Positions 40,880 to 48,558 of a stretch of 64,000 nt of DNA are shown in pieces (the first letter of the stretch is position 1; every line of letters begins with the position of its first letter). Position numbers and translations under genes: made by a program. Under the pieces are notes generated by a model. The model did not search any database. It was given only the letters and a program-made list of their open reading frames with translations, and was not told the DNA's origin. This stretch comes from Convolutriloba macropyga (taxonomy: Eukaryota): assembly GCF_964194025.1 (NCBI RefSeq), contig NC_134468.1, positions 72,230,001-72,294,000 on the forward strand, read 5' to 3'.

Positions 40880-41067
40880 GTTTGCGCTCTAGTTAGGCTG
40901 ATCTGAAGTTGATTCGAACGTTGCTTGGAACGTCAGTCTGGGACTTATCGATTTGCAGCATAGTTGTTGATATGATTCAAACTCATAGTAAGTAATATAT
41001 CATCAGATATTCGTGGGAGCTCTTAGAATGCTTTATTGGGTCTCCCGGACCGAGGAATTTGGCCAAA

Positions 41068-41254
41068 ATTATGTGAGATCAGCGGCAACTAGCGTTGACA
41101 AGTCGGAATATTCACCGCAATTTTCTTACATAATTTTGCGTTGAATGCGTTGTATTTAAAGACAAAAATTCAACGCATTCAGCGCAAAATTATGTAAGAA
41201 ATGGCGGTGAATTTTCCAACTTGTCAACGCTAGTTGCCGCTGATCTTACATATT
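41068..41254. repeat. Short palindrome with ~85-bp arms at the left edge of the foldback structure
   Basis: 'atgtgagatcagcggcaactagcgttgacaagt...tgaatgcgttg' is mirrored by 'caacgcattca...acttgtcaacgctagttgccgctgatcttacat'. Confidence 0.9.
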
Positions 41255-41365
41255 TAGCGTTGAATTTAGCGTAGACCTTACATATTTAGCGTTGAATTTA
41301 GCGTAGATCTTACATATTTTTGCGTTGAATTTAGCGTTGATCTTACAAAAAATCAACGCGTAGAA

Positions 41366-41437
41366 CGCTGGGTATGGGACTCGAACCACTGACCTCCTGT
41401 TTACTTGTCGCCACTTTTACCATTGCGCCAACGTACC
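41366..41437 (-). ncRNA. tRNA-Thr(AGT)-derived Pol III unit / SINE-like head, copy 1 (not a functional tRNA)
   Basis: Reverse complement of copy 3, with A box TGGCGCAATGG and B box GGTTCGAGTCC. Confidence 0.7.
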
Positions 41438-42586
41438 AGGGTTTCCTTAAGAGCCGCAATCCTTATAAAGCGTAGATCTTACATATTTTGCATTGAATTT
41501 AACGTAGAACTTGCATTTATTTTGTTGAATTTAGCCTAGATCTTACATATTTTTCGTTGAATTTAGCCGAGATCTTACATAATTTCAACGTATTCAACGC
41601 ATTTATCATGTGAGAAGTACTGGGAAAAATTTAAAATTTTTTTAAGTTTTGAAAAAAATTTGAATTCCTAAATTGGTCTGAATTTAATTTTGCACCGTAA
41701 GAGAGCAAATGGTTATTTTTTGCTGACTTCATTTTTCTCAATTGAGCAGTATAGGGTTCGAAATAGTGAAAAAATTAATTTTTCGAAAGAAAACTTGAAT
41801 AAGTTTTGAAATCGTAAAATGGTCTGAAACGGATTTTGCACAATAAGAGAGCACTAAAAATTAATTTTTCTCTGACTTCACGTTTCTCACCTTTGAAGCA
41901 TAGGCGTCGAATCAGTGAAATTGATTTTTCGAAAAAAACTTGGAAAAGTTTTGAAATCGTAAAATGGTCTCAAATGGATTTTGCACTATAAAAGAGCACT
42001 AAAAACTGTTTTTTTGCGGACTTCGCTTTTCTCAACTGTGAAGTATAGGATTCGAAACAGTGAAAAAATTGACTTTTTGAAAAAAAGCTTGAAAAACTTT
42101 TGAAATGGAATTCATAAAATTCAACCTTAATTTTTTAAGATCTAAGCCAAAATTCTACGCAAAATATGTAAGATTGGTGTTGAAAGCGTTGAAATTATGT
42201 CAGATCTACGCTAAATATGTAAGATCTACGCTACAATTCAACGCTAAATATGTAAGATCTACGCCAAATTTCAACGCAAAATATGTAAGATTGGCGTCGA
42301 ATGCTTTGAATTTATGTAAGATAAACGCTAAATTCAACGCTAAACATGTAAGATCTACGCTAAAATTCAACGCTAAATATGTAAGATTTACGCCAAAATT
42401 CAACGCAAAATTATGTAAGATTGGGGTTGAATGCATTGAATTTATGTAAGATCTACGCTAAATTCAACGAAAAATATGTAAGATCTAGGCTAAATTCAAC
42501 AAAATAAATGCAAGTTCTACGTTAAATTCAATGCAAAATATGTAAGATCTACGCTTTATAAGGATTGCGGCTCTTAAGGAAACCCA

Positions 42587-42658
42587 GGTACGCTGGCGCA
42601 ATGGTAGAAGTGGCGACAAGTAAACAGGAGTTCAGTGGTTCGAGTCACATACCCATCG
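42587..42658 (+). ncRNA. tRNA-Thr(AGT)-derived Pol III unit / SINE-like head, copy 2
   Basis: GGTACGCTGGCGCAATGGTAGAAGTGGCGACAAGTAAACAGGAGTTCAGTGGTTCGAGTCACATACCCATCG, with upstream TATAA and downstream T6. Confidence 0.65.
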
Positions 42659-44116
42659 TTCTACGCGTTGATTTTTTGTAAGATCTACACTAAATTCAAC
42701 GCTAAATATGTAAGATCTACGCTAAAATTCAACGCTAAATATGTAAGATCTACGCCAAATTTCAACGCAAAATATGTAAGATTGGCGTTGAATGCGTTGA
42801 ATTTATGTAAGATTTACGCTTGAGCGTAGATCTTACATAAAATCAACGCAGTCAACGCAAATCTTACATATTTTGCGTTGAAATTTGGCGTAGATCTTAC
42901 ATATTTAGCGTTGAATTTTAGCGTAGATCTTACATATTTAGCGTTGAATTTAGTGTAGATCGTACATAAATTCAACGCATTCAACGCCAATTTTACATAT
43001 TTTGCGTTAAAATTTGGCGTAGATCTTACATTTTTAGCGTTGAATTTTAGCGTAGATCTTACATATTTAGCGTTGAATTTAGCGTAGATCTTAAATAAAT
43101 TCAATGCATTCAACGCCAATCTTACATAATTTTGGGTTGAAATTTGGCGTAAATCTTACAAATTTAGCGTTGAATTTTAGCGTAGATCTTACATGTTTAG
43201 CGTTGAATTTAGCGTTTATCTTACATAAATTCAAAGCATTCGACGCCAATCTTACATATTTTGCGTTGAAATTTGGCGTAGATCATACATATTTAGCGTT
43301 GAATTGTAGCGTAGATCTTACATATTTAGCGTTGAATTTAGCGTAGATCTGACATAATTTCAACGCTTTCAACACCAATCTTACATATTTTGCGTAGAAT
43401 TTTGGCTTAGATCTTAAAAATTTAAGGTTGAATTTTATGAATTCCATTTCAAAAGTTTTTCAAGCTTTTTTTTCAAAAAGTCAATTTTTTCACTGTTTCG
43501 AATCCTATACTTCACAGTTGAGAAAAGCGAAGTCCGCAAAAAAACACTTTTTAGTGCTCTTTTATAGTGCAAAATCCATTTGAGACCATTTTACGATTTC
43601 AAAACTTTTCCAAGTTTTTTTCGAAAAATCAATTTCACTGTTTCGACGCCTGTGGTTCAAAGGTGAGAAACGTGAAGTCAGAGAAAAATTATTTTTTAGT
43701 GCTCTTTTATTGTGCAAAATCCGTTTCAGACCATTTTACGATTTCAAAACTTTTTCAAGTTTTCTTTCGAAAAATTAATTTTTTCACTATTTCGAACCCT
43801 ATACTGCTCAATTGAGAAAAATGAAGTCAGCAAAAAATAACCATTTGCTCTCTTACGGTGCAAAATTAAATTCAGACCAATTTAGGAATTCAAATTTTTT
43901 TCAAAACTTAAAAAAAATTTTAAATTTTTCCCAGTACTTCTCACATGATAAATGCGTTGAATACGTTGAAATTATGTAAGATCTCGGCTAAACTCAACGA
44001 AAAATATGTAAGATCTAGGCTAATTTCAACAAAATAAATGCAAGTTCTACGTTAAATTCAATGCAAAATATGTAAGATCTACGCTTTATAAGGATTGCGG
44101 CTCTTAAGGAAACCCA

Positions 44117-44188
44117 GGTACGTTGGCGCAATGGTAGAAGTGGCGACAAGTAAACAGGAGGTCAGTGGTTCGAGTCCCATACCCAGCG
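44117..44188 (+). ncRNA. tRNA-Thr(AGT)-derived Pol III unit / SINE-like head, copy 3
   Basis: A box and B box are intact. 'AGTAAACAGGAG' matches the anticodon loop and 3' arm of eukaryotic tRNA-Thr(AGT). TATAA at 44087-44091 and T6 at 44202-44207. The D and anticodon stems cannot pair. Confidence 0.7.
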
Positions 44189-44443
44189 TTCTACGGGTTG
44201 ATTTTTTGTAAGATCAACGCTAAATTCAACGCAAAAATATGTAAGATCTACGCTAAATTCAAGATGGACTTATAATTTTTACGCTCCCCAGATTCAGGTG
44301 CTTCATTTTACATAGAGTAATGTGCTACTATATAATAAGCTTTTTTGATTATTTTCACATCCAACTTTCAGTAGTACAATTTCTTTCGGTTTCAGTAGTA
44401 CAATCCTAGAAGTCAAAGCATATACAAATACATTGTAATCACA

Positions 44444-44650
44444 ATGGGCAACCTATTCTCAAAAGATAAGGAAACCAAACCCGAAGATACCAAACCAGCT
44501 GAAGAGACAAAACCCGCAGACGAAGGAGCTGCCCCCGCGGGTGATGCACCGGCCGAGGCTGCTGCCGGCGAATTCCAGTTTCGACTGAACGAGATTTCGC
44601 CCGAAAGATACGAGTGTTCAGACGCATTCCTCTCGAGCAGAAATTATTAG
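44444..44650 (+). CDS. Small acidic Ala/Glu/Pro-rich ORF with an N-myristoylation signal (BASP1/MARCKS-like composition); probably a first coding exon ending near 44567
   Basis: MGNLFSK fits the MGxxxS(K) consensus, with A at -3 and an upstream acceptor 'ggtttcag' at ~44395. GC-rich codons encode repeated (E/D)TKP. Composition changes after AEAAA at 'GCC G|gcgaat'. Confidence 0.6.
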   Translation: MGNLFSKDKETKPEDTKPAEETKPADEGAAPAGDAPAEAAAGEFQFRLNEISPERYECSDAFLSSRNY

Positions 44651-46742
44651 ACGTGGCACTTGAGTTCATCTCATGGAATCGGCACTTAGCCGATGTGCCT
44701 TATGAAAACACTAGTATATGTAGTCAATCATTAAACTCATATTTTGAGTGAGAACGGTTTCTAGAATTGTTTCATTTGGTTAACCAGCCCACAAATGGAT
44801 CTTTTCCGCTAGCCCCCTTTTCCAAAAATAATTAACTTTTTCAGAAGAGGTGTAAGTTATGCTCGGGCAATAAATTGCTTGCTTAAATTCTATTCAAGAA
44901 GTGCCTAACCCTTTGTACTTGGGGAAGAGAAGGTTGAAAAGATCCAAATTTTTCCTAAGCGCGATCACAAAATCACAAAAATGTTTAGAAAAATGAAACA
45001 ATTTTAGGTTTTTATTTAAAGAGTACCTTTATATCCTATTATATGTTGCTGGGTTAAATTGGTATGGAGTCATTTTGGGTTTCCAGCTTTCAGTTTGTAA
45101 CAGCTGCCATTGAAAACTGTTTGTCGCACAAGATCAGAATAATAATAATGATGAGTATTAATTAATTGCCAGGTGCAGAACTATGATCATATTATTCACG
45201 ATATTTTGGGACAATCTATCACATTAACATAGCTAACAGTAATATTTTGTTAATTCACGTTCGCAAAAGTTTTAATTTTTTTTAGAAAACCGAACACCAG
45301 GTTCGTTTCAGTTTGTTTCAATTCTATAGTCCCAAATATTTACGTCCAAAATATGTGAGGATTTACGGTCAAGGTTAAAGAAAAAATTGCTAAGTATCGA
45401 AAACATTGAAGTAACTTAGAAAATGTCAACGAACAAAAAACGATCATATTAGTTAAGAATTTAAATATAGAGATCGAACGATGAAACGTAAGATCAATTT
45501 GTTTCCTTGATCAAGGAATAGTTAAACGTTAGAAGTTAAAAAAAGAATAGAAATAGTACTAATTTCGAAAAGTTGCAGTTCATTCATTTCTTTCATAACA
45601 GAACGGAGACACATGGTTTTTAAACATCAAATCATTCTTTGGGAATTTTCAAAAAATATAGAGTATTTCAATTTTCGATTGGTATTGGTGGCGTTTCTAG
45701 CGGGGAAGAAATTTTTCTTGTCAATTGAAGACTAAATTGCATTATACAGCTACATATAATTCAGTGTCAAAAACGAGAGCAGGAGTAGTTTGAATGGAGC
45801 CCAGCTATTTGCAAAAGATAATATTTAAGGCATTTCCCATTTTCAAAATTTCAAAAAATAACTAAAATCTATCAGCTTGTTGACATACGGAAAACAAAGT
45901 GCGTAATAACTGCTGCCCTTCAAAATTCTCAGTTGATTTGACGAAATGTGAAATTGTGCGAAAAATTTGTTGCCTGTTTGATAATAATATCCATAGATAC
46001 AGCTAACGCGGCTTTCTTAAAATCTAGATTCCCAATAGTCACCGAGACATACATAATAATTACAAAACATTTGGTTTTTTGGATTGGTTTATTCATAAAC
46101 GGTATTCTCAACACAGCTCAATAGCTTTCCAAACAAATCTGAAAAAAAGCCTCACAATTAGGTAGTATTTTGCCGCCAAAATGCTTCATGGCTCTTCGTC
46201 CGAACTCTGTGAACTCTATTTTCAAAAAACAATTAGTCCATAAAACCGTTCTGTGTATGCTTCCGTTATGTAGTTCTTTATGACCTTTTTTAGAAAAAAC
46301 TCCGTATCCAAATTACTATTTCATGGAGATTTTTGAATTTTCATTGCAATAAAATATACTCATTCGACAAAAAACATACTGGAATCATTATTTCTTGCTA
46401 TAGAAGATGAAGCAATTTCTGTGCTGTGTTATTTTGACAAAAACCATATTCTACTAAAGAATTCATCAACTGAAAAAAAATCATTGAATTTGGAACATTA
46501 ATTATATTTAAAAAATAGGCCAAAATACAGCTCACAACAGAAAACAATCAGCAAGATTATCTAATAAGGATAAATTTGCAGTCAATGAATTTCGGCTTGA
46601 TTTTGTTTGGTTAGTAAATTGTGTCTCATTGTTACGTTTGAATGCATTTTAATTTTTTTACAAACTTGAAATTTTTCTGAGAATTACATCACAACTTAAT
46701 TTTTAATTCAGTTTTGAATTTTGTAAAATATGAAAACACTTT

Positions 46743-48558
46743 TGTTAGAGTATACACTCTAGTAAATAAGTTGTGATCATAAGATTGAGCTTGAAATGAT
46801 AGCTCAATATAAGAGATCATAGTAAGACTCTCGTAGTGTGGACCAGTTGGCTCAATAGAGAGCACAGGATTGCAATCAATTGAGAGATTGTGGGGTCGCA
46901 ACCCACATAGGTCCCAAAACTTTACTCTCACTATAATGATGTTGACATAGAATCAATATAACGAGCAAAAGAGTTGCTCTAATAGGTTATGGGCCCAGCT
47001 TAACGCTCTAACCAGAAGTTGAAAGTGAGGAGTTACATTGCACAACTTAAGGAGGTGTGTTAGAGTATACACTCTAGTAAATAAGTTGTGATCATAAGAT
47101 TGAGCTTGAAATGATAGCTCAATATAAGGGATCATAGTAAGACTCTCGCAGTGTGGACCAGTTGGCTCAATAGAGAGCACAGGATTGCAATCAATTGAGA
47201 GATTGTGGGGTCGCAACCCATATAGGTACCAAAACTTTACTCTCACTATAATGATGTTGACATAGAATCAATATAACGAGCAAAAGAGTTGCTCTAATAG
47301 GTTATGGGCCCAGCTTAACGCTCTAACCAGAAGTTGAAAGTGAGGAGTTACATTGCACAACTTAAGGAGGTGTGTTAGAGTATACACTCTAGTAAATAAG
47401 TTGTGATCATAAGATTGAGCTTGAAATGATAGCTCAATATAAGAGATCATAGTAAGTCTCTCACAGTGTGGACCAGTTGGCTCAATAGAGAGCACAGGAT
47501 TGCAATCAATTAAGAGATTGTGGGGTCGCAACCCACATAGGTCCCAAAACTTTAATCTCACTATAATGGTGTTGACATAGAATCAAAATAACGAGCAAAA
47601 GTGTTGCTCTAATAGGTTATGGGCCCAGCTTAACGCTCTAACCAGAAGTTGAAAGTGAGGAGTTACATTGCACAACTTAAGGAGGTGTGTTAGAGTATAC
47701 ACTCTAGTAAATAAGTTGTGATCATAAGATTGAGCTTGAAATGATAGCTCAATATAAGAGATCATAGTAAGACTCTCGCAGTGTGGACCAGTTGGCTCAA
47801 TGGAGAGCACAGGATTGCAATCAATTAAGAGATTGTGTGGTCGCAAACCACATAGGTCCCAAAACTTTACTCTCACTATAATGGTGATGACATAGAATCA
47901 AAATAACGAGCAAAAGTGTTGCTCTAATAGGTTATGGGCCCAGCTTAAAGCTCTAACCAGAAGTTGAAAGTGAGGAGTTACATTGCACAACTTAAGGAGG
48001 TGTGTTAGAGTATACACTCTAGTAAATAAGTTGTGATCATAAGATTGAGCTTGAAATGATAGCTCAATATAAGAGAGCATAGTAAGACTCCCGCAGTGTG
48101 GACCAGTTGGCTCAATAGAGAGCACAGGATTGCAATCAATTGAGAGATTGTGGGGTCGCAACCCACATAGGTCCCAAAACTTTACTCTCACTATAATGGT
48201 GTTGACATAGAATCATTAAACGAGCAAAAGAGTTGCTCTAATAGGTTATGGGCCCAGCTTAACGCTCTAACCAGAAGTTGAAAGTGAGGAGTTACGTTGC
48301 ACAACTCAAGGGGGTGTGTTAGAGTATACACTCTAGTAAATAAGTTGTGATCATAAGATTGAGCTTGAAATGATAGCTCAATATAAGAGAGCATAGTAAG
48401 ACTCTCGCAGTGTGGACCAGTTGGCTCAGTAGAGAGCACAGGATTGCAATCAATTCAGAGATTGTGGGGTCGCAACCCACATAGGTCCCAAAACTTTACT
48501 CTCACTATAATGGTGTTGACATAGAATCAACATAACGAGCAAAAGAGTTGCTCTAATA
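46743..48558. repeat. 315-bp tandem repeat, ~5.8 copies
   Basis: 'gacatagaatca' recurs with its tca at 46953, 47268, 47583, 47898, 48213 and 48527. The copies are nearly identical. Confidence 0.97.

What the first reader, a model, noticed from the sequence alone, without database searches (positions are those of the whole stretch)
41292..44262. Foldback element carrying three apparently complete tRNA-Thr-derived Pol III small-RNA units
Seen: each module has TATAA at about -30 (44087-44091 for a start at 44117), A box TGGCGCAATGG, B box GGTTCGAGTCC (GGTTCGAGTCA in copy 2) and a T6 run ~15 nt after the tRNA-like body, predicting a ~90-nt transcript. The core AGTAAACAGGAG matches eukaryotic tRNA-Thr(AGT), but the D and anticodon stems are lost. 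A shifted terminal helix is possible instead (ACGUUGG with CCAGCGU), as is GUAGAA with UUCUAC. There is no poly-A or LINE-like tail and no obvious TSD; the module sits inside the minisatellite arms and was multiplied with them. Known: type-2 Pol III promoters use A and B boxes and terminate at T-runs, and TFIIIC-bound B boxes can act as chromatin boundaries. Inference: this may be an undescribed composite element that spreads at the DNA level while carrying its own Pol III gene, either producing a small RNA or acting as a portable insulator.
Basis: partly seen in the sequence, partly recalled or inferred. Interest (0 to 1): 0.75.

Follow-up and report, generated by a model that had tools for sequence, protein, structure and literature searches.

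The report
DNA transposon carrying a tRNA-like module
The stretch is an old, locally duplicated and one-end-truncated copy of a very abundant non-coding cut-and-paste transposon of the acoel worm Convolutriloba macropyga. Every standard copy carries one tRNA-derived piece that still looks like an RNA polymerase III promoter, but nothing yet shows that the piece is used.

Summary
Three tRNA-like modules with TATAA, A box, B box and T6 lie where stated, inside a real foldback.

The unit is not a local curiosity. It is one rearranged copy of a dispersed family:
- The two end types occur 770 and 789 times in the genome.
- Both ends carry the same 12-bp inverted repeat, CCCGGGCCGAGG.
- 15 of 16 complete copies have a 2-bp target-site duplication.
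- Copies are 1.4-6.6 kb, built only of 33/129-bp and 145-bp satellites.

A standard copy is asymmetric. It holds one 105-bp insert (TATAA plus a 70-nt tRNA-like body) 350-480 bp from one end. The window copy really starts at 41044, lacks its right end, and tripled the module by local inverted duplication; all three copies share private changes.

So [quoted passage not shown] is supported. "A small-RNA gene or insulator" is not:
- ARAGORN and Rfam make no tRNA call.
- The predicted RNA folds worse than shuffles.
- There is no covariation, and the proposed terminal helix is complete only in this locus.
- The B-box segment is the least conserved of three equal-length segments counted, and it is broken in the one old copy found.

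No RNA data could be reached. Word searches of the scan's notes found no earlier report of this element.

The parts
41044..41055 (+). Terminal inverted repeat of the element's 'A' end (CCCGGACCGAGG, 11 of 12 to the family's CCCGGGCCGAGG). This is the true left boundary of the element.
   Evidence: the only match in the 64-kb window; the same 12-mer at both ends of the family copies.
41077..41245 (.). Subterminal near-perfect palindrome of about 170 bp, a constant part of the A end.
   Evidence: sequence; only sub-threshold hairpin hits to plant miRNA models; the same piece in other copies.
41242..41347 (.). 33-bp minisatellite, 3.3 units, between the A-end palindrome and module 1.
41365..41469 (-). 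105-bp insert, copy 1: TATAA, a 70-nt tRNA-like body with A and B boxes, followed by T6 (predicted RNA 41437 down to 41347). It points outward, towards the A end, as in standard copies.
41473..41585 (.). Degenerate 33-bp repeats.
41649..42106 (.). 145-bp satellite, 3.1 units.
   Evidence: present in most family copies.
42115..42555 (.). 33/129-bp satellite array.
42555..42659 (+). 105-bp insert, copy 2, the extra inner copy. Its B box reads GGTTCGAGTCA. Predicted RNA 42587-42677.
   Evidence: repeat I4, 42426-42706, is the inverted copy of 41318-41598.
42657..42986 (.). Central palindrome of the local inverted duplication (arms 42657-42820 and 42823-42986, 2 nt apart).
   Evidence: repeat I7.
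42823..43437 (.). 129-bp satellite, 4.8 units, inverted relative to 42115-42555.
43446..43904 (.). 145-bp satellite, 3.1 units, inverted copy of 41649-42106.
43969..44085 (.). Degenerate 33-bp repeats upstream of module 3.
44085..44189 (+). 105-bp insert, copy 3: TATAA 44087-44091, A box 44124-44134, B box 44167-44177.
44202..44207 (+). T6 run, a possible Pol III terminator. It lies in minisatellite-like sequence, GCGTTGATTTTTTGTAAGATC.
44190..44262 (.). Remnant of the 33-bp minisatellite. The element is truncated at 44262: no terminal palindrome and no terminal repeat follow.
   Evidence: (L001 row). DNA contigs of 4 runs cross this junction, 44235-46770.

Best explanation
The region 41044-44262 is one old, rearranged copy of a high-copy, non-autonomous cut-and-paste (class II) DNA transposon of Convolutriloba macropyga.

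The standard element:
- It is 1.4-6.6 kb long and has no coding capacity.
- It is bounded by the 12-bp inverted repeat CCCGGGCCGAGG and makes a 2-bp target-site duplication.
- It consists of subterminal palindromes, oppositely oriented arrays of a 33-bp unit (also organised as 129 bp), and a 145-bp satellite.
- It carries exactly one 105-bp insert, 350-480 bp from the 'A' end and pointing outward.

The insert holds a TATAA and a 70-nt tRNA-derived body. Its anticodon loop, variable region and B box resemble tRNA-Thr(AGT). Its A box sits at the tRNA position, and its stems are lost.

Inferred origin of the insert: a tRNA gene fragment or a SINE head entered the minisatellite of the family's ancestor. 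The flanking 7-bp repeat TCTACGC may be its footprint. It has since been copied as a passenger whenever a transposase supplied in trans moved the element.

Inferred history of this locus: one copy of an older lineage underwent a local inverted duplication, plus an extra partial duplication, and lost one end. That produced the foldback and the three modules.

The consensus module has every sequence signal of a type-2 Pol III gene, so some copies may bind TFIIIC or be transcribed into an unstructured RNA of about 90 nt. I put that at roughly 40-50%. The data give no sign that such RNA or binding is selected for.
For: Family and ends:
- The 136-nt module region gave 1020 first-look candidates. 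All 40 that were scored are 95-100% identical and lie on many chromosomes.
- In 27 of 27 independent loci the repeat ends sharply 300-450 bp downstream of the module, at ...CCTCGGCCCGGG.
- The far end carries the same 12-mer, followed by different sequence.
- 15 of 16 complete copies, and also L023, have identical 2-bp flanks of varied sequence.
- The elements are wholly satellite.
- No second module or second A end lies within 10 kb in 8 of 8 complete copies.

Genome counts of 37-mers:
- A end: 770.
- B end: 789.
- Junction of minisatellite and insert: 734.
- A-box/anticodon part: 655.
- B-box part: 480.

Local origin of the triplication:
- The three window copies share four changes absent from the family consensus.
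- The window's variant of the 37-mer occurs without mismatch only in this window.

No RNA-level signal:
- No tRNA call.
- Minimum free energy is weaker than for shuffles.
- No covariation: 234 of 500 shuffles match or exceed the observed pairing.

One old, diverged copy (L031:3586-3996) keeps the termini at about 93% identity but the insert at 78%. Its B box reads GTTTGGAGTCC and its TATAA is lost.

The right junction is real DNA in 4 runs.

The genome is identified by total length and scaffold count: 1,175.98 Mb in 4,694 scaffolds (against PMC13650328).
Against: - No transposase-bearing partner was found, so the superfamily and the claim of mobilisation in trans are inferred.
- No empty site or excision footprint was examined.
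- The A box, the B box, their 32-nt spacing, TATAA at -30 and T6 are all intact in the family consensus, although the cloverleaf is gone. That is the pattern expected of a sequence once selected for Pol III transcription (a SINE head), so the module may be more than inert.
- The 27 sampled copies are too alike to compare decay of boxes and flanks: 0.46% from consensus in the insert. They were also picked by similarity to the module.
- The evidence from an old copy rests on a single copy.
- The 7-bp direct repeat could be an accident of the periodic minisatellite. It is not seen in the old copy.
Confidence: 0.8

Rival explanations
1. The module is a working Pol III gene or TFIIIC site kept by selection. 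On this view the transposon family distributes about 650 small-RNA genes or chromatin-boundary elements, to its own benefit or the host's.
For: The consensus has a complete set of type-2 Pol III signals at tRNA spacing, plus a terminator. The module is present in most elements: 655-734 against about 780 ends. The boxes are intact while the stems are lost, as in SINE heads. Retroelements with a small-RNA-derived Pol III promoter are an accepted class (PMC10886601).
Against: A cut-and-paste element needs no RNA template, so there is no known reason for it to keep a Pol III promoter. The predicted RNA is less stable than shuffles and shows no covariation. The B-box 37-mer is the least conserved of three equal-length segments counted. 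In the one old copy found, the B box and TATAA have decayed more than the termini. High retention is explained by the module lying only 350-480 bp from an essential end. There are no expression data.
Confidence: 0.15
2. An ordinary tRNA-derived SINE inserted once at this locus and was then duplicated together with the local minisatellite. On this view the association is a one-off.
For: A 7-bp direct repeat flanks the 105-bp insert. The three window copies are local duplicates.
Against: The same insert sits at the same place in the same context in all 27 other loci on many chromosomes. The junction occurs 734 times in the genome. The insert has no A-rich or LINE-like tail, and it includes 35 nt upstream of the tRNA-like start. 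A single insertion is plausible only in the ancestor of the whole family, and that is already part of the main explanation.
Confidence: 0.03
3. The foldback is an assembly artefact of a repeat-rich region.
For: The region is built of high-copy repeats. Short-read contigs break inside it (table 8).
Against: Contigs from 4 DNA runs cross both outer junctions (41000-41072 and 44235-46770). The assembly is from HiFi reads (PMC13650328). Comparable multi-module arrangements occur at other loci, for example C3:64098342, 64098812 and 64101151. No read spans the whole 3.2 kb here, so the inner arrangement is not independently confirmed.
Confidence: 0.02

Closest known systems
Foldback (FB) elements of Drosophila, and other transposons whose arms are arrays of short tandem repeats
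   Same: There is no coding capacity. The body is built of tandem sub-repeats lying in opposite orientation on the two sides. Length is highly variable through gain and loss of repeats, and copies are prone to palindromic rearrangement.
   Different: The target duplication is 2 bp rather than 9 bp (the 9 bp for FB is from my own knowledge). The two sides are not mirror images. There is a unique 145-bp satellite, and a tRNA-like insert on one side only.
TRIMp3 elements (Cassandra, Helenus, Ajax): non-autonomous LTR retrotransposons with a tRNA- or 5S-derived Pol III promoter (PMC10886601)
   Same: A non-autonomous mobile element carries, as a fixed part, a small-RNA-gene-derived piece that keeps its promoter boxes but cannot form the RNA's structure. 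The proposed origin is a SINE or small-RNA gene inserting into the ancestor.
   Different: Those are retroelements with LTRs, a primer-binding site and a polypurine tract, and the promoter makes the template RNA. This element has inverted terminal repeats and a 2-bp duplication, so no RNA template is needed and the module has no evident role in movement.
tRNA-derived SINEs (SINE2)
   Same: A tRNA-like head has A and B boxes at tRNA spacing and degraded stems.
   Different: It has no tail, no target duplication of its own at each copy, and no free-standing copies at high similarity. It is never at the 5' end of the mobile unit.
DNA transposon groups that make 2-bp target duplications: ISL2EU and other Harbinger relatives (PHIS), and Mirage and Plavaka within the CMC(T) clade (PMC12730594)
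   Same: 2-bp target duplication (literature). Many subterminal repeats share a short motif.
   Different: CMC(T) termini are mostly 5'-CA..TG-3'; here they are 5'-CCC..GGG-3'. No transposase is linked. The Harbinger-type DDE domain PF13359 has only 4 hits, all on small unplaced scaffolds. The superfamily is therefore unassigned.
MITE-like elements with internal satellite cores (bivalve 'pearl'-type elements, Xenopus Xstir)
   Same: A short terminal structure encloses tandem repeats that also expand as arrays (the review PMC6947457, lists TE-to-satellite cases).
   Different: This element is larger (1.4-6.6 kb), has two different satellites, and carries the tRNA-like insert.

Membership tests
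tRNA gene | Cloverleaf recognised by tRNA finders or covariance models | tested here: not met
   ARAGORN makes no call on the module in the window or in the 47 family loci scanned; the one tRNA it reports there, a tRNA-Met in L039, lies outside the element. Rfam finds no tRNA hit at E up to 10, even on the 108-nt stretch alone.
tRNA gene | A and B boxes at canonical spacing, with a T-run terminator | tested here: met
   The A box starts at +8 and the B box at +51 of the predicted start. T6 begins 13 nt after the body.
tRNA-derived SINE | Free-standing dispersed copies, each with its own target duplication and a 3' tail | tested here: not met
   All 27 independent loci are embedded in the same transposon. 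Junction count 734 is at least the core count 655. No tail is present.
Class II (TIR) DNA transposon, non-autonomous | Terminal inverted repeats | tested here: met
   CCCGGGCCGAGG at both ends, in inverted orientation.
Class II (TIR) DNA transposon, non-autonomous | Target-site duplication of constant length | tested here: met
   2 bp, of varied sequence, in 15 of 16 complete copies and in L023.
Class II (TIR) DNA transposon, non-autonomous | Many dispersed copies with sharp common ends and no transposase gene | tested here: met
   770 and 789 ends. Sharp boundaries. The body is all satellite.
Class II (TIR) DNA transposon, non-autonomous | An autonomous partner with the same termini; empty or excised sites | not tested
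145 further copies of the 12-mer, followed by C or G, are candidates.
Drosophila-type Foldback element | Long, mutually inverted arms made of tandem sub-repeats | tested here: inconclusive
   The 33-bp arrays on the two sides are inverted relative to each other, but the sides differ in content and length.
Drosophila-type Foldback element | 9-bp target duplication (from my own knowledge) | tested here: not met
   2 bp.
MITE | Small size (below about 800 bp) | tested here: not met
   1.4-6.6 kb in the complete copies read. One end pair about 0.9 kb apart appears in the lists but was not fetched.
TRIMp3 (Helenus-like) | LTRs with a primer-binding site and a polypurine tract | tested here: not met
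   The ends are 12-bp inverted repeats. There are no direct long terminal repeats.
CMC(T) clade (Mirage and relatives) | Termini 5'-CA..TG-3' with a 2-5 bp duplication (PMC12730594) | tested here: not met
   The duplication length fits, but the termini are CCC..GGG.
PHIS (Harbinger/ISL2EU) | DDE_Tnp_4-type transposase in an element with the same termini | not testable with these tools
   Only 4 PF13359 hits, on small scaffolds. Their flanks could not be fetched.

The most novel reading that the evidence does not exclude
This would be the DNA-transposon counterpart of SINEs and TRIMp3 elements. A cut-and-paste family would have seeded the acoel genome with about 650 portable, TFIIIC-bound or Pol III-transcribed units. 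These would act as small-RNA sources or chromatin boundaries, for example module 3 lying 250 bp upstream of a putative start codon at 44444.
Probability: 0.15. Interest if true: 0.6.

Novelty: new variant of a known kind. Interest (0 to 1): 0.35.

Why it matters
Mobile elements that carry a small-RNA-derived Pol III promoter are known among retroelements (SINEs, Cassandra, Helenus, Ajax). There the promoter makes the RNA that is copied.

Here the same kind of piece rides in a cut-and-paste DNA transposon, which needs no such RNA. The family therefore offers a natural test of two things: what a bare A/B-box unit does when scattered about 650 times through a genome, and whether it decays neutrally.

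The family is also a young, very homogeneous, previously undescribed repeat of a newly sequenced acoel genome whose genome note contains no transposon analysis. It matters for annotation, since these hairpin-rich copies will attract false miRNA and tRNA-like calls. If the module is inert, the finding is an ordinary repeat family with a captured fragment.

Tried and rejected
- tRNA gene or pseudogene call: ARAGORN and Rfam find nothing.
- Structured small RNA: folds are weaker than shuffles.
- Symmetric foldback as the family unit: rejected. In 8 of 8 complete copies no second module or A end lies within 10 kb.
- piggyBac-like element (CCC...GGG ends): rejected. Flanks show no TTAA, only a varied 2-bp duplication.
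- Harbinger-type partner: PF13359 gave only 4 hits on small scaffolds, which is inconclusive.
- Expression: no RNA run was listed. The four runs found are DNA, shown by a continuous contig across non-coding sequence.
- Comparing decay of boxes and flanks in 27 copies: no power, because the copies are 99.5% identical to consensus and were chosen by module similarity.
For the same reason the real tRNA-Thr genes could not be read in full.
I did not pursue reading genome letters that way.
- Paper searches for a DNA transposon carrying a tRNA-like Pol III unit found no direct precedent. That is not proof that none exists.
Full report
**What is in the window**

The 37-nt core (A box through the anticodon-like AGTAAACAGGAG) occurs at 41394-41430 (minus strand), 42594-42630 and 44124-44160 (plus strand). 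None is expected in shuffles.

For copy 3:
- TATAA is at 44087-44091.
- The A box TGGCGCAATGG is at 44124-44134.
- The B box GGTTCGAGTCC is at 44167-44177.
- T6 is at 44202-44207.

The A box therefore begins at +8 and the B box at +51 of a start at 44117, which is tRNA geometry.

The foldback is real. Arms 41292-41661 and 43893-44262 are 97% complementary. Arms 41622-42101 and 43452-43931 are 96% complementary. A central palindrome has arms 42657-42820 and 42823-42986. The arms consist of a 33-bp unit (also organised as 129 bp) and a 145-bp satellite.

ARAGORN finds no tRNA in the window or on the module in the family loci. Rfam gives no tRNA hit at E up to 10, even when only the 108-nt stretch is searched.

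**Which genome**

The window's genome has 1,175,981,408 bases in 4,694 pieces. That equals the published assembly of the acoel Convolutriloba macropyga: 1,175.98 Mb in 4,694 scaffolds, txConMacr16.3 (PMC13650328). Earlier notes of this scan had named that species, and the match confirms it. The genome note contains no transposon analysis.

**It is a dispersed family, not a local oddity**

The 136-nt module region gave 1020 first-look candidates in the genome. The 40 scored are 95-100% identical and lie on many chromosomes.

In every one of 27 independent loci, the module is embedded in the same 33-bp minisatellite with the 145-bp satellite upstream. In each, the shared sequence stops abruptly 300-450 bp downstream of the module, at a conserved end ...GGCCAAATTCCTCGGCCCGGG.

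Eight copies were followed for 10 kb inward. They end 2.3-6.6 kb away at a different terminal sequence that finishes with the same 12 bases in inverted orientation. So the element has 12-bp terminal inverted repeats, CCCGGGCCGAGG.

In 15 of 16 complete copies the two bases outside the left end equal the two bases outside the right end (TC, CA, AA, TT, TA, AC, GA, AT, TG and others). The 1.4-kb copy in L023 does the same. That is a 2-bp target-site duplication without sequence preference, and it marks the family as a cut-and-paste DNA transposon.

The elements are satellite DNA throughout; TRF covers the 6.6-kb copy almost entirely. They are therefore non-autonomous.

| 37-mer counted in the genome | Copies | Mismatches allowed |
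|---|---|---|
| 'A' end (module side) | 770 | 2 |
| 'B' end | 789 | 2 |

**Anatomy of a standard copy (module on the plus strand)**

In order:
1. B-end repeat.
2. Short palindrome.
3. 1.2-5 kb of the 33/129-bp array in one orientation.
4. 0-5 units of the 145-bp satellite.
5. A few 33-bp units in the opposite orientation.
6. The 105-bp insert.
7. 6-9 more 33-bp units.
8. A palindrome of about 170 bp.
9. A-end repeat.

The element is foldback-like in that its two sides carry inverted arrays, but it is asymmetric and has one module. None of the eight complete copies has a second module or a second A end within 10 kb.

The insert runs from TTTATAAGG to CCCAGAGT. It sits between two copies of TCTACGC, which may be a target duplication of an ancient insertion into the minisatellite. 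This is weak evidence, because the motif recurs every 33 bp and is not seen in the old copy. The T6 lies in minisatellite-like sequence, not in the insert.

**What the window copy is**

The only terminal repeat in the 64-kb window is at 41044-41055 (CCCGGACCGAGG). It is followed by the A-end palindrome at 41077-245.

On the right, similarity to the family stops at 44262. That is only 73 bp after module 3, with no palindrome and no terminal repeat (L001 row). That end is truncated.

Reading from the left:
- The window holds one element in reverse orientation, from its A end into the 129-bp array.
- Next comes an extra fragment with module 2.
- After the palindrome centre at 42821/42822 comes an inverted copy running back out through the 145-bp satellite to module 3.

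All three modules share four changes against the family consensus: CCAAGG to CCCAGG or CCCTGG, ACGG to ACGT or ACGC, GAAGAGG to GAAGTGG, and CAGAGT to CAGCGT or CATCGT. The window's version of the 37-mer occurs without mismatch nowhere else in the genome.

The foldback and the triplication are therefore a private rearrangement of a single insertion. That insertion belongs to a lineage older than the main burst: window copies differ from the consensus by 3.5-5% and from each other by 2-4%, while 27 family copies differ from the consensus by about 0.5%.

Similar multi-module clusters occur at other loci, for example three within 3 kb on C3 at 64.098-64.101 Mb, and pairs about 200 bp apart. Such rearrangements recur in this palindrome-rich family.

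Contigs of four DNA runs cross both outer junctions. No read here spans the inner arrangement.

**Is the module a tRNA-Thr derivative?**

The genome's own tRNA-Thr anticodon arm, CTGTCTAGTAAACAGGAGATC, has 267 matches at up to 2 mismatches, 17 of them exact. The module shares AGTAAACAGGAG, the following variable region, and a perfect B box with it.

The 5' half (ACGGTGGCGCAATGGTAGAAGAGGCGAC) does not look like what I recall of tRNA-Thr. That is my own knowledge.

I take the module as tRNA-derived, with the 3' half plausibly from tRNA-Thr(AGT). The 5' half may be chimeric or heavily mutated.

Intact boxes with ruined stems is the pattern of SINE heads. That suggests the piece once lived under selection for Pol III transcription. 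This step is inferred.

**Is it a working Pol III gene?**

The signals are all present in the consensus, so transcription or TFIIIC binding is possible. Every test I could run for function came out neutral or negative.

- *Structure.* The predicted 91-nt and 74-nt RNAs of the consensus and of all three window copies fold more weakly than their shuffles, with z from +0.68 to +1.75.
In the family consensus it is 5 of 7 (ACGGUGG/CCAGAGU).
- *Covariation.* Across 11 distinct variants, neither that helix nor GUAGA/UCUAC shows covariation. 234 of 500 shuffles match or exceed the observed pairing, and 400 of 500 the covariation score.
- *Genome-wide conservation.* Among equal-length 37-mers at up to 3 mismatches, the B-box segment is the least conserved:

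| Segment | Copies |
|---|---|
| Junction plus TATAA | 734 |
| A box to anticodon | 655 |
| B box | 480 |

- *One old copy.* The only old, diverged relative in the sequence I hold is L031:3586-3996. It keeps the terminal 110 bp at about 93% identity but the insert at 78%. Its B box reads GTTTGGAGTCC and its TATAA reads TGTTAA. This is a single copy.
- *Sampled copies.* Within the 27 young copies, variation is too low to compare boxes and flanks: 0 of 297 cells differ in the A box, 1 of 297 in the B box, and 0.46% in the whole insert. The sample was also chosen by module similarity.
- *Expression.* No RNA run was reachable. The four runs listed are DNA.

**Free-standing copies**

The junction between minisatellite and insert is at least as frequent as the module core, 734 against 655. 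So at this level of similarity there is no population of stand-alone modules.

It gave only the old in-element copy and two insignificant tRNA-like matches. One of these, L025:2380-2465, has its own A-like box, the B box GGTTCGAACCC and a T5. It may be an unrelated tRNA-derived repeat.

**Superfamily**

A 2-bp duplication of any sequence is reported for ISL2EU and other Harbinger relatives, and for Mirage and Plavaka within the CMC(T) clade. The latter mostly have CA..TG termini (PMC12730594). The termini here are CCC..GGG, so CMC(T) fits less well.

The Harbinger-type DDE domain has only four hits in this genome, all on small scaffolds. I could not fetch their flanks.

The same 12-mer occurs 145 more times followed by C or G. 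The one I could read is a B-end variant. The commoner form, CCCGGGCCGAGGC, is unexamined and is the first place to look for a partner. The superfamily stays open.

**Comparison with what is known, and verdict**

In architecture the family works like Foldback-type and satellite-cored non-autonomous DNA transposons. In carrying a fixed tRNA-derived promoter-like piece, it parallels SINEs and the LTR elements Cassandra, Helenus and Ajax ("TRIMp3", PMC10886601). In those, a SINE insertion into the ancestor is the proposed origin, and the promoter makes the template RNA.

It is a member of neither group. It has inverted terminal repeats and a 2-bp duplication, no LTRs, no tail, and no RNA intermediate to make.

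My searches found no description of a cut-and-paste family with such a module. I therefore rate it a new variant of a known kind.

The functional inference (small-RNA gene or insulator) is untested, and on present evidence is less likely than a passenger relic.

Noticed in passing
G000 C13:31.08-31.17 Mb and C12:3.39-3.42 Mb (outside the window): Very large clusters of tRNA-Thr-like anticodon arms, often about 275 bp apart. Anticodons AGT, CGT and TGT are mixed, with many single-base variants. There are 267 hits to the 21-mer at up to 2 mismatches, strongly strand-biased (30 forward, 237 reverse). They look like tandemly amplified tRNA-Thr gene arrays.
   Followed up: no
window 46689-48439: A tandem repeat of about 315 bp, at least 5 units, each unit carrying an open frame of about 97 codons on the minus strand. 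DNA depth rises sharply again from about 46713, so this is another high-copy repeat.
   Followed up: no
window 41077-41245 and 42735-42908: The element's long near-perfect palindromes give sub-threshold Rfam hits to several plant and animal miRNA precursor families, for example MIR7504 at 57.6 bits against an 83-bit threshold. These are generic hairpin matches and a likely source of false miRNA annotation. If transcribed, they could feed small-RNA pathways.
   Followed up: partly
L025:2380-2465: In the unique flank of another copy lies a separate tRNA-like unit: GGTGGCGC..., the B box GGTTCGAACCC, and T5 about 27 nt later. It has only weak similarity to the module (72% over 53 nt). It may be a member of a tRNA-derived repeat family.
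   Followed up: partly
G000, 145 places, e.g. C1:7337520, C1:66395086, C7:26533837: The same 12-bp terminal repeat CCCGGGCCGAGG, followed by C (most) or G. This is a third type of terminus: either a related family or the missing transposase-bearing partner.
   Followed up: partly
G000 C3:18833490-18833895; C7:22278171-22278441; C3:2855014-2857611: The insert and its neighbouring minisatellite are themselves tandemly multiplied at some loci, with spacings of about 170-200 bp and 1281 bp.
   Followed up: no
window 44444-44650: An open frame starting MGNLFSKDKE..., with a glycine at position 2 as in N-myristoylated proteins, begins 182 bp to the right of the truncated element end. Module 3 points towards it from about 250 bp upstream.
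   Followed up: no
L039:5974-6045: A genuine initiator-type tRNA-Met gene has a (TA)n/TATAAAAAA tract directly upstream and a T5 3 nt after its end. This is one example of how real Pol III genes look in this genome.
   Followed up: partly
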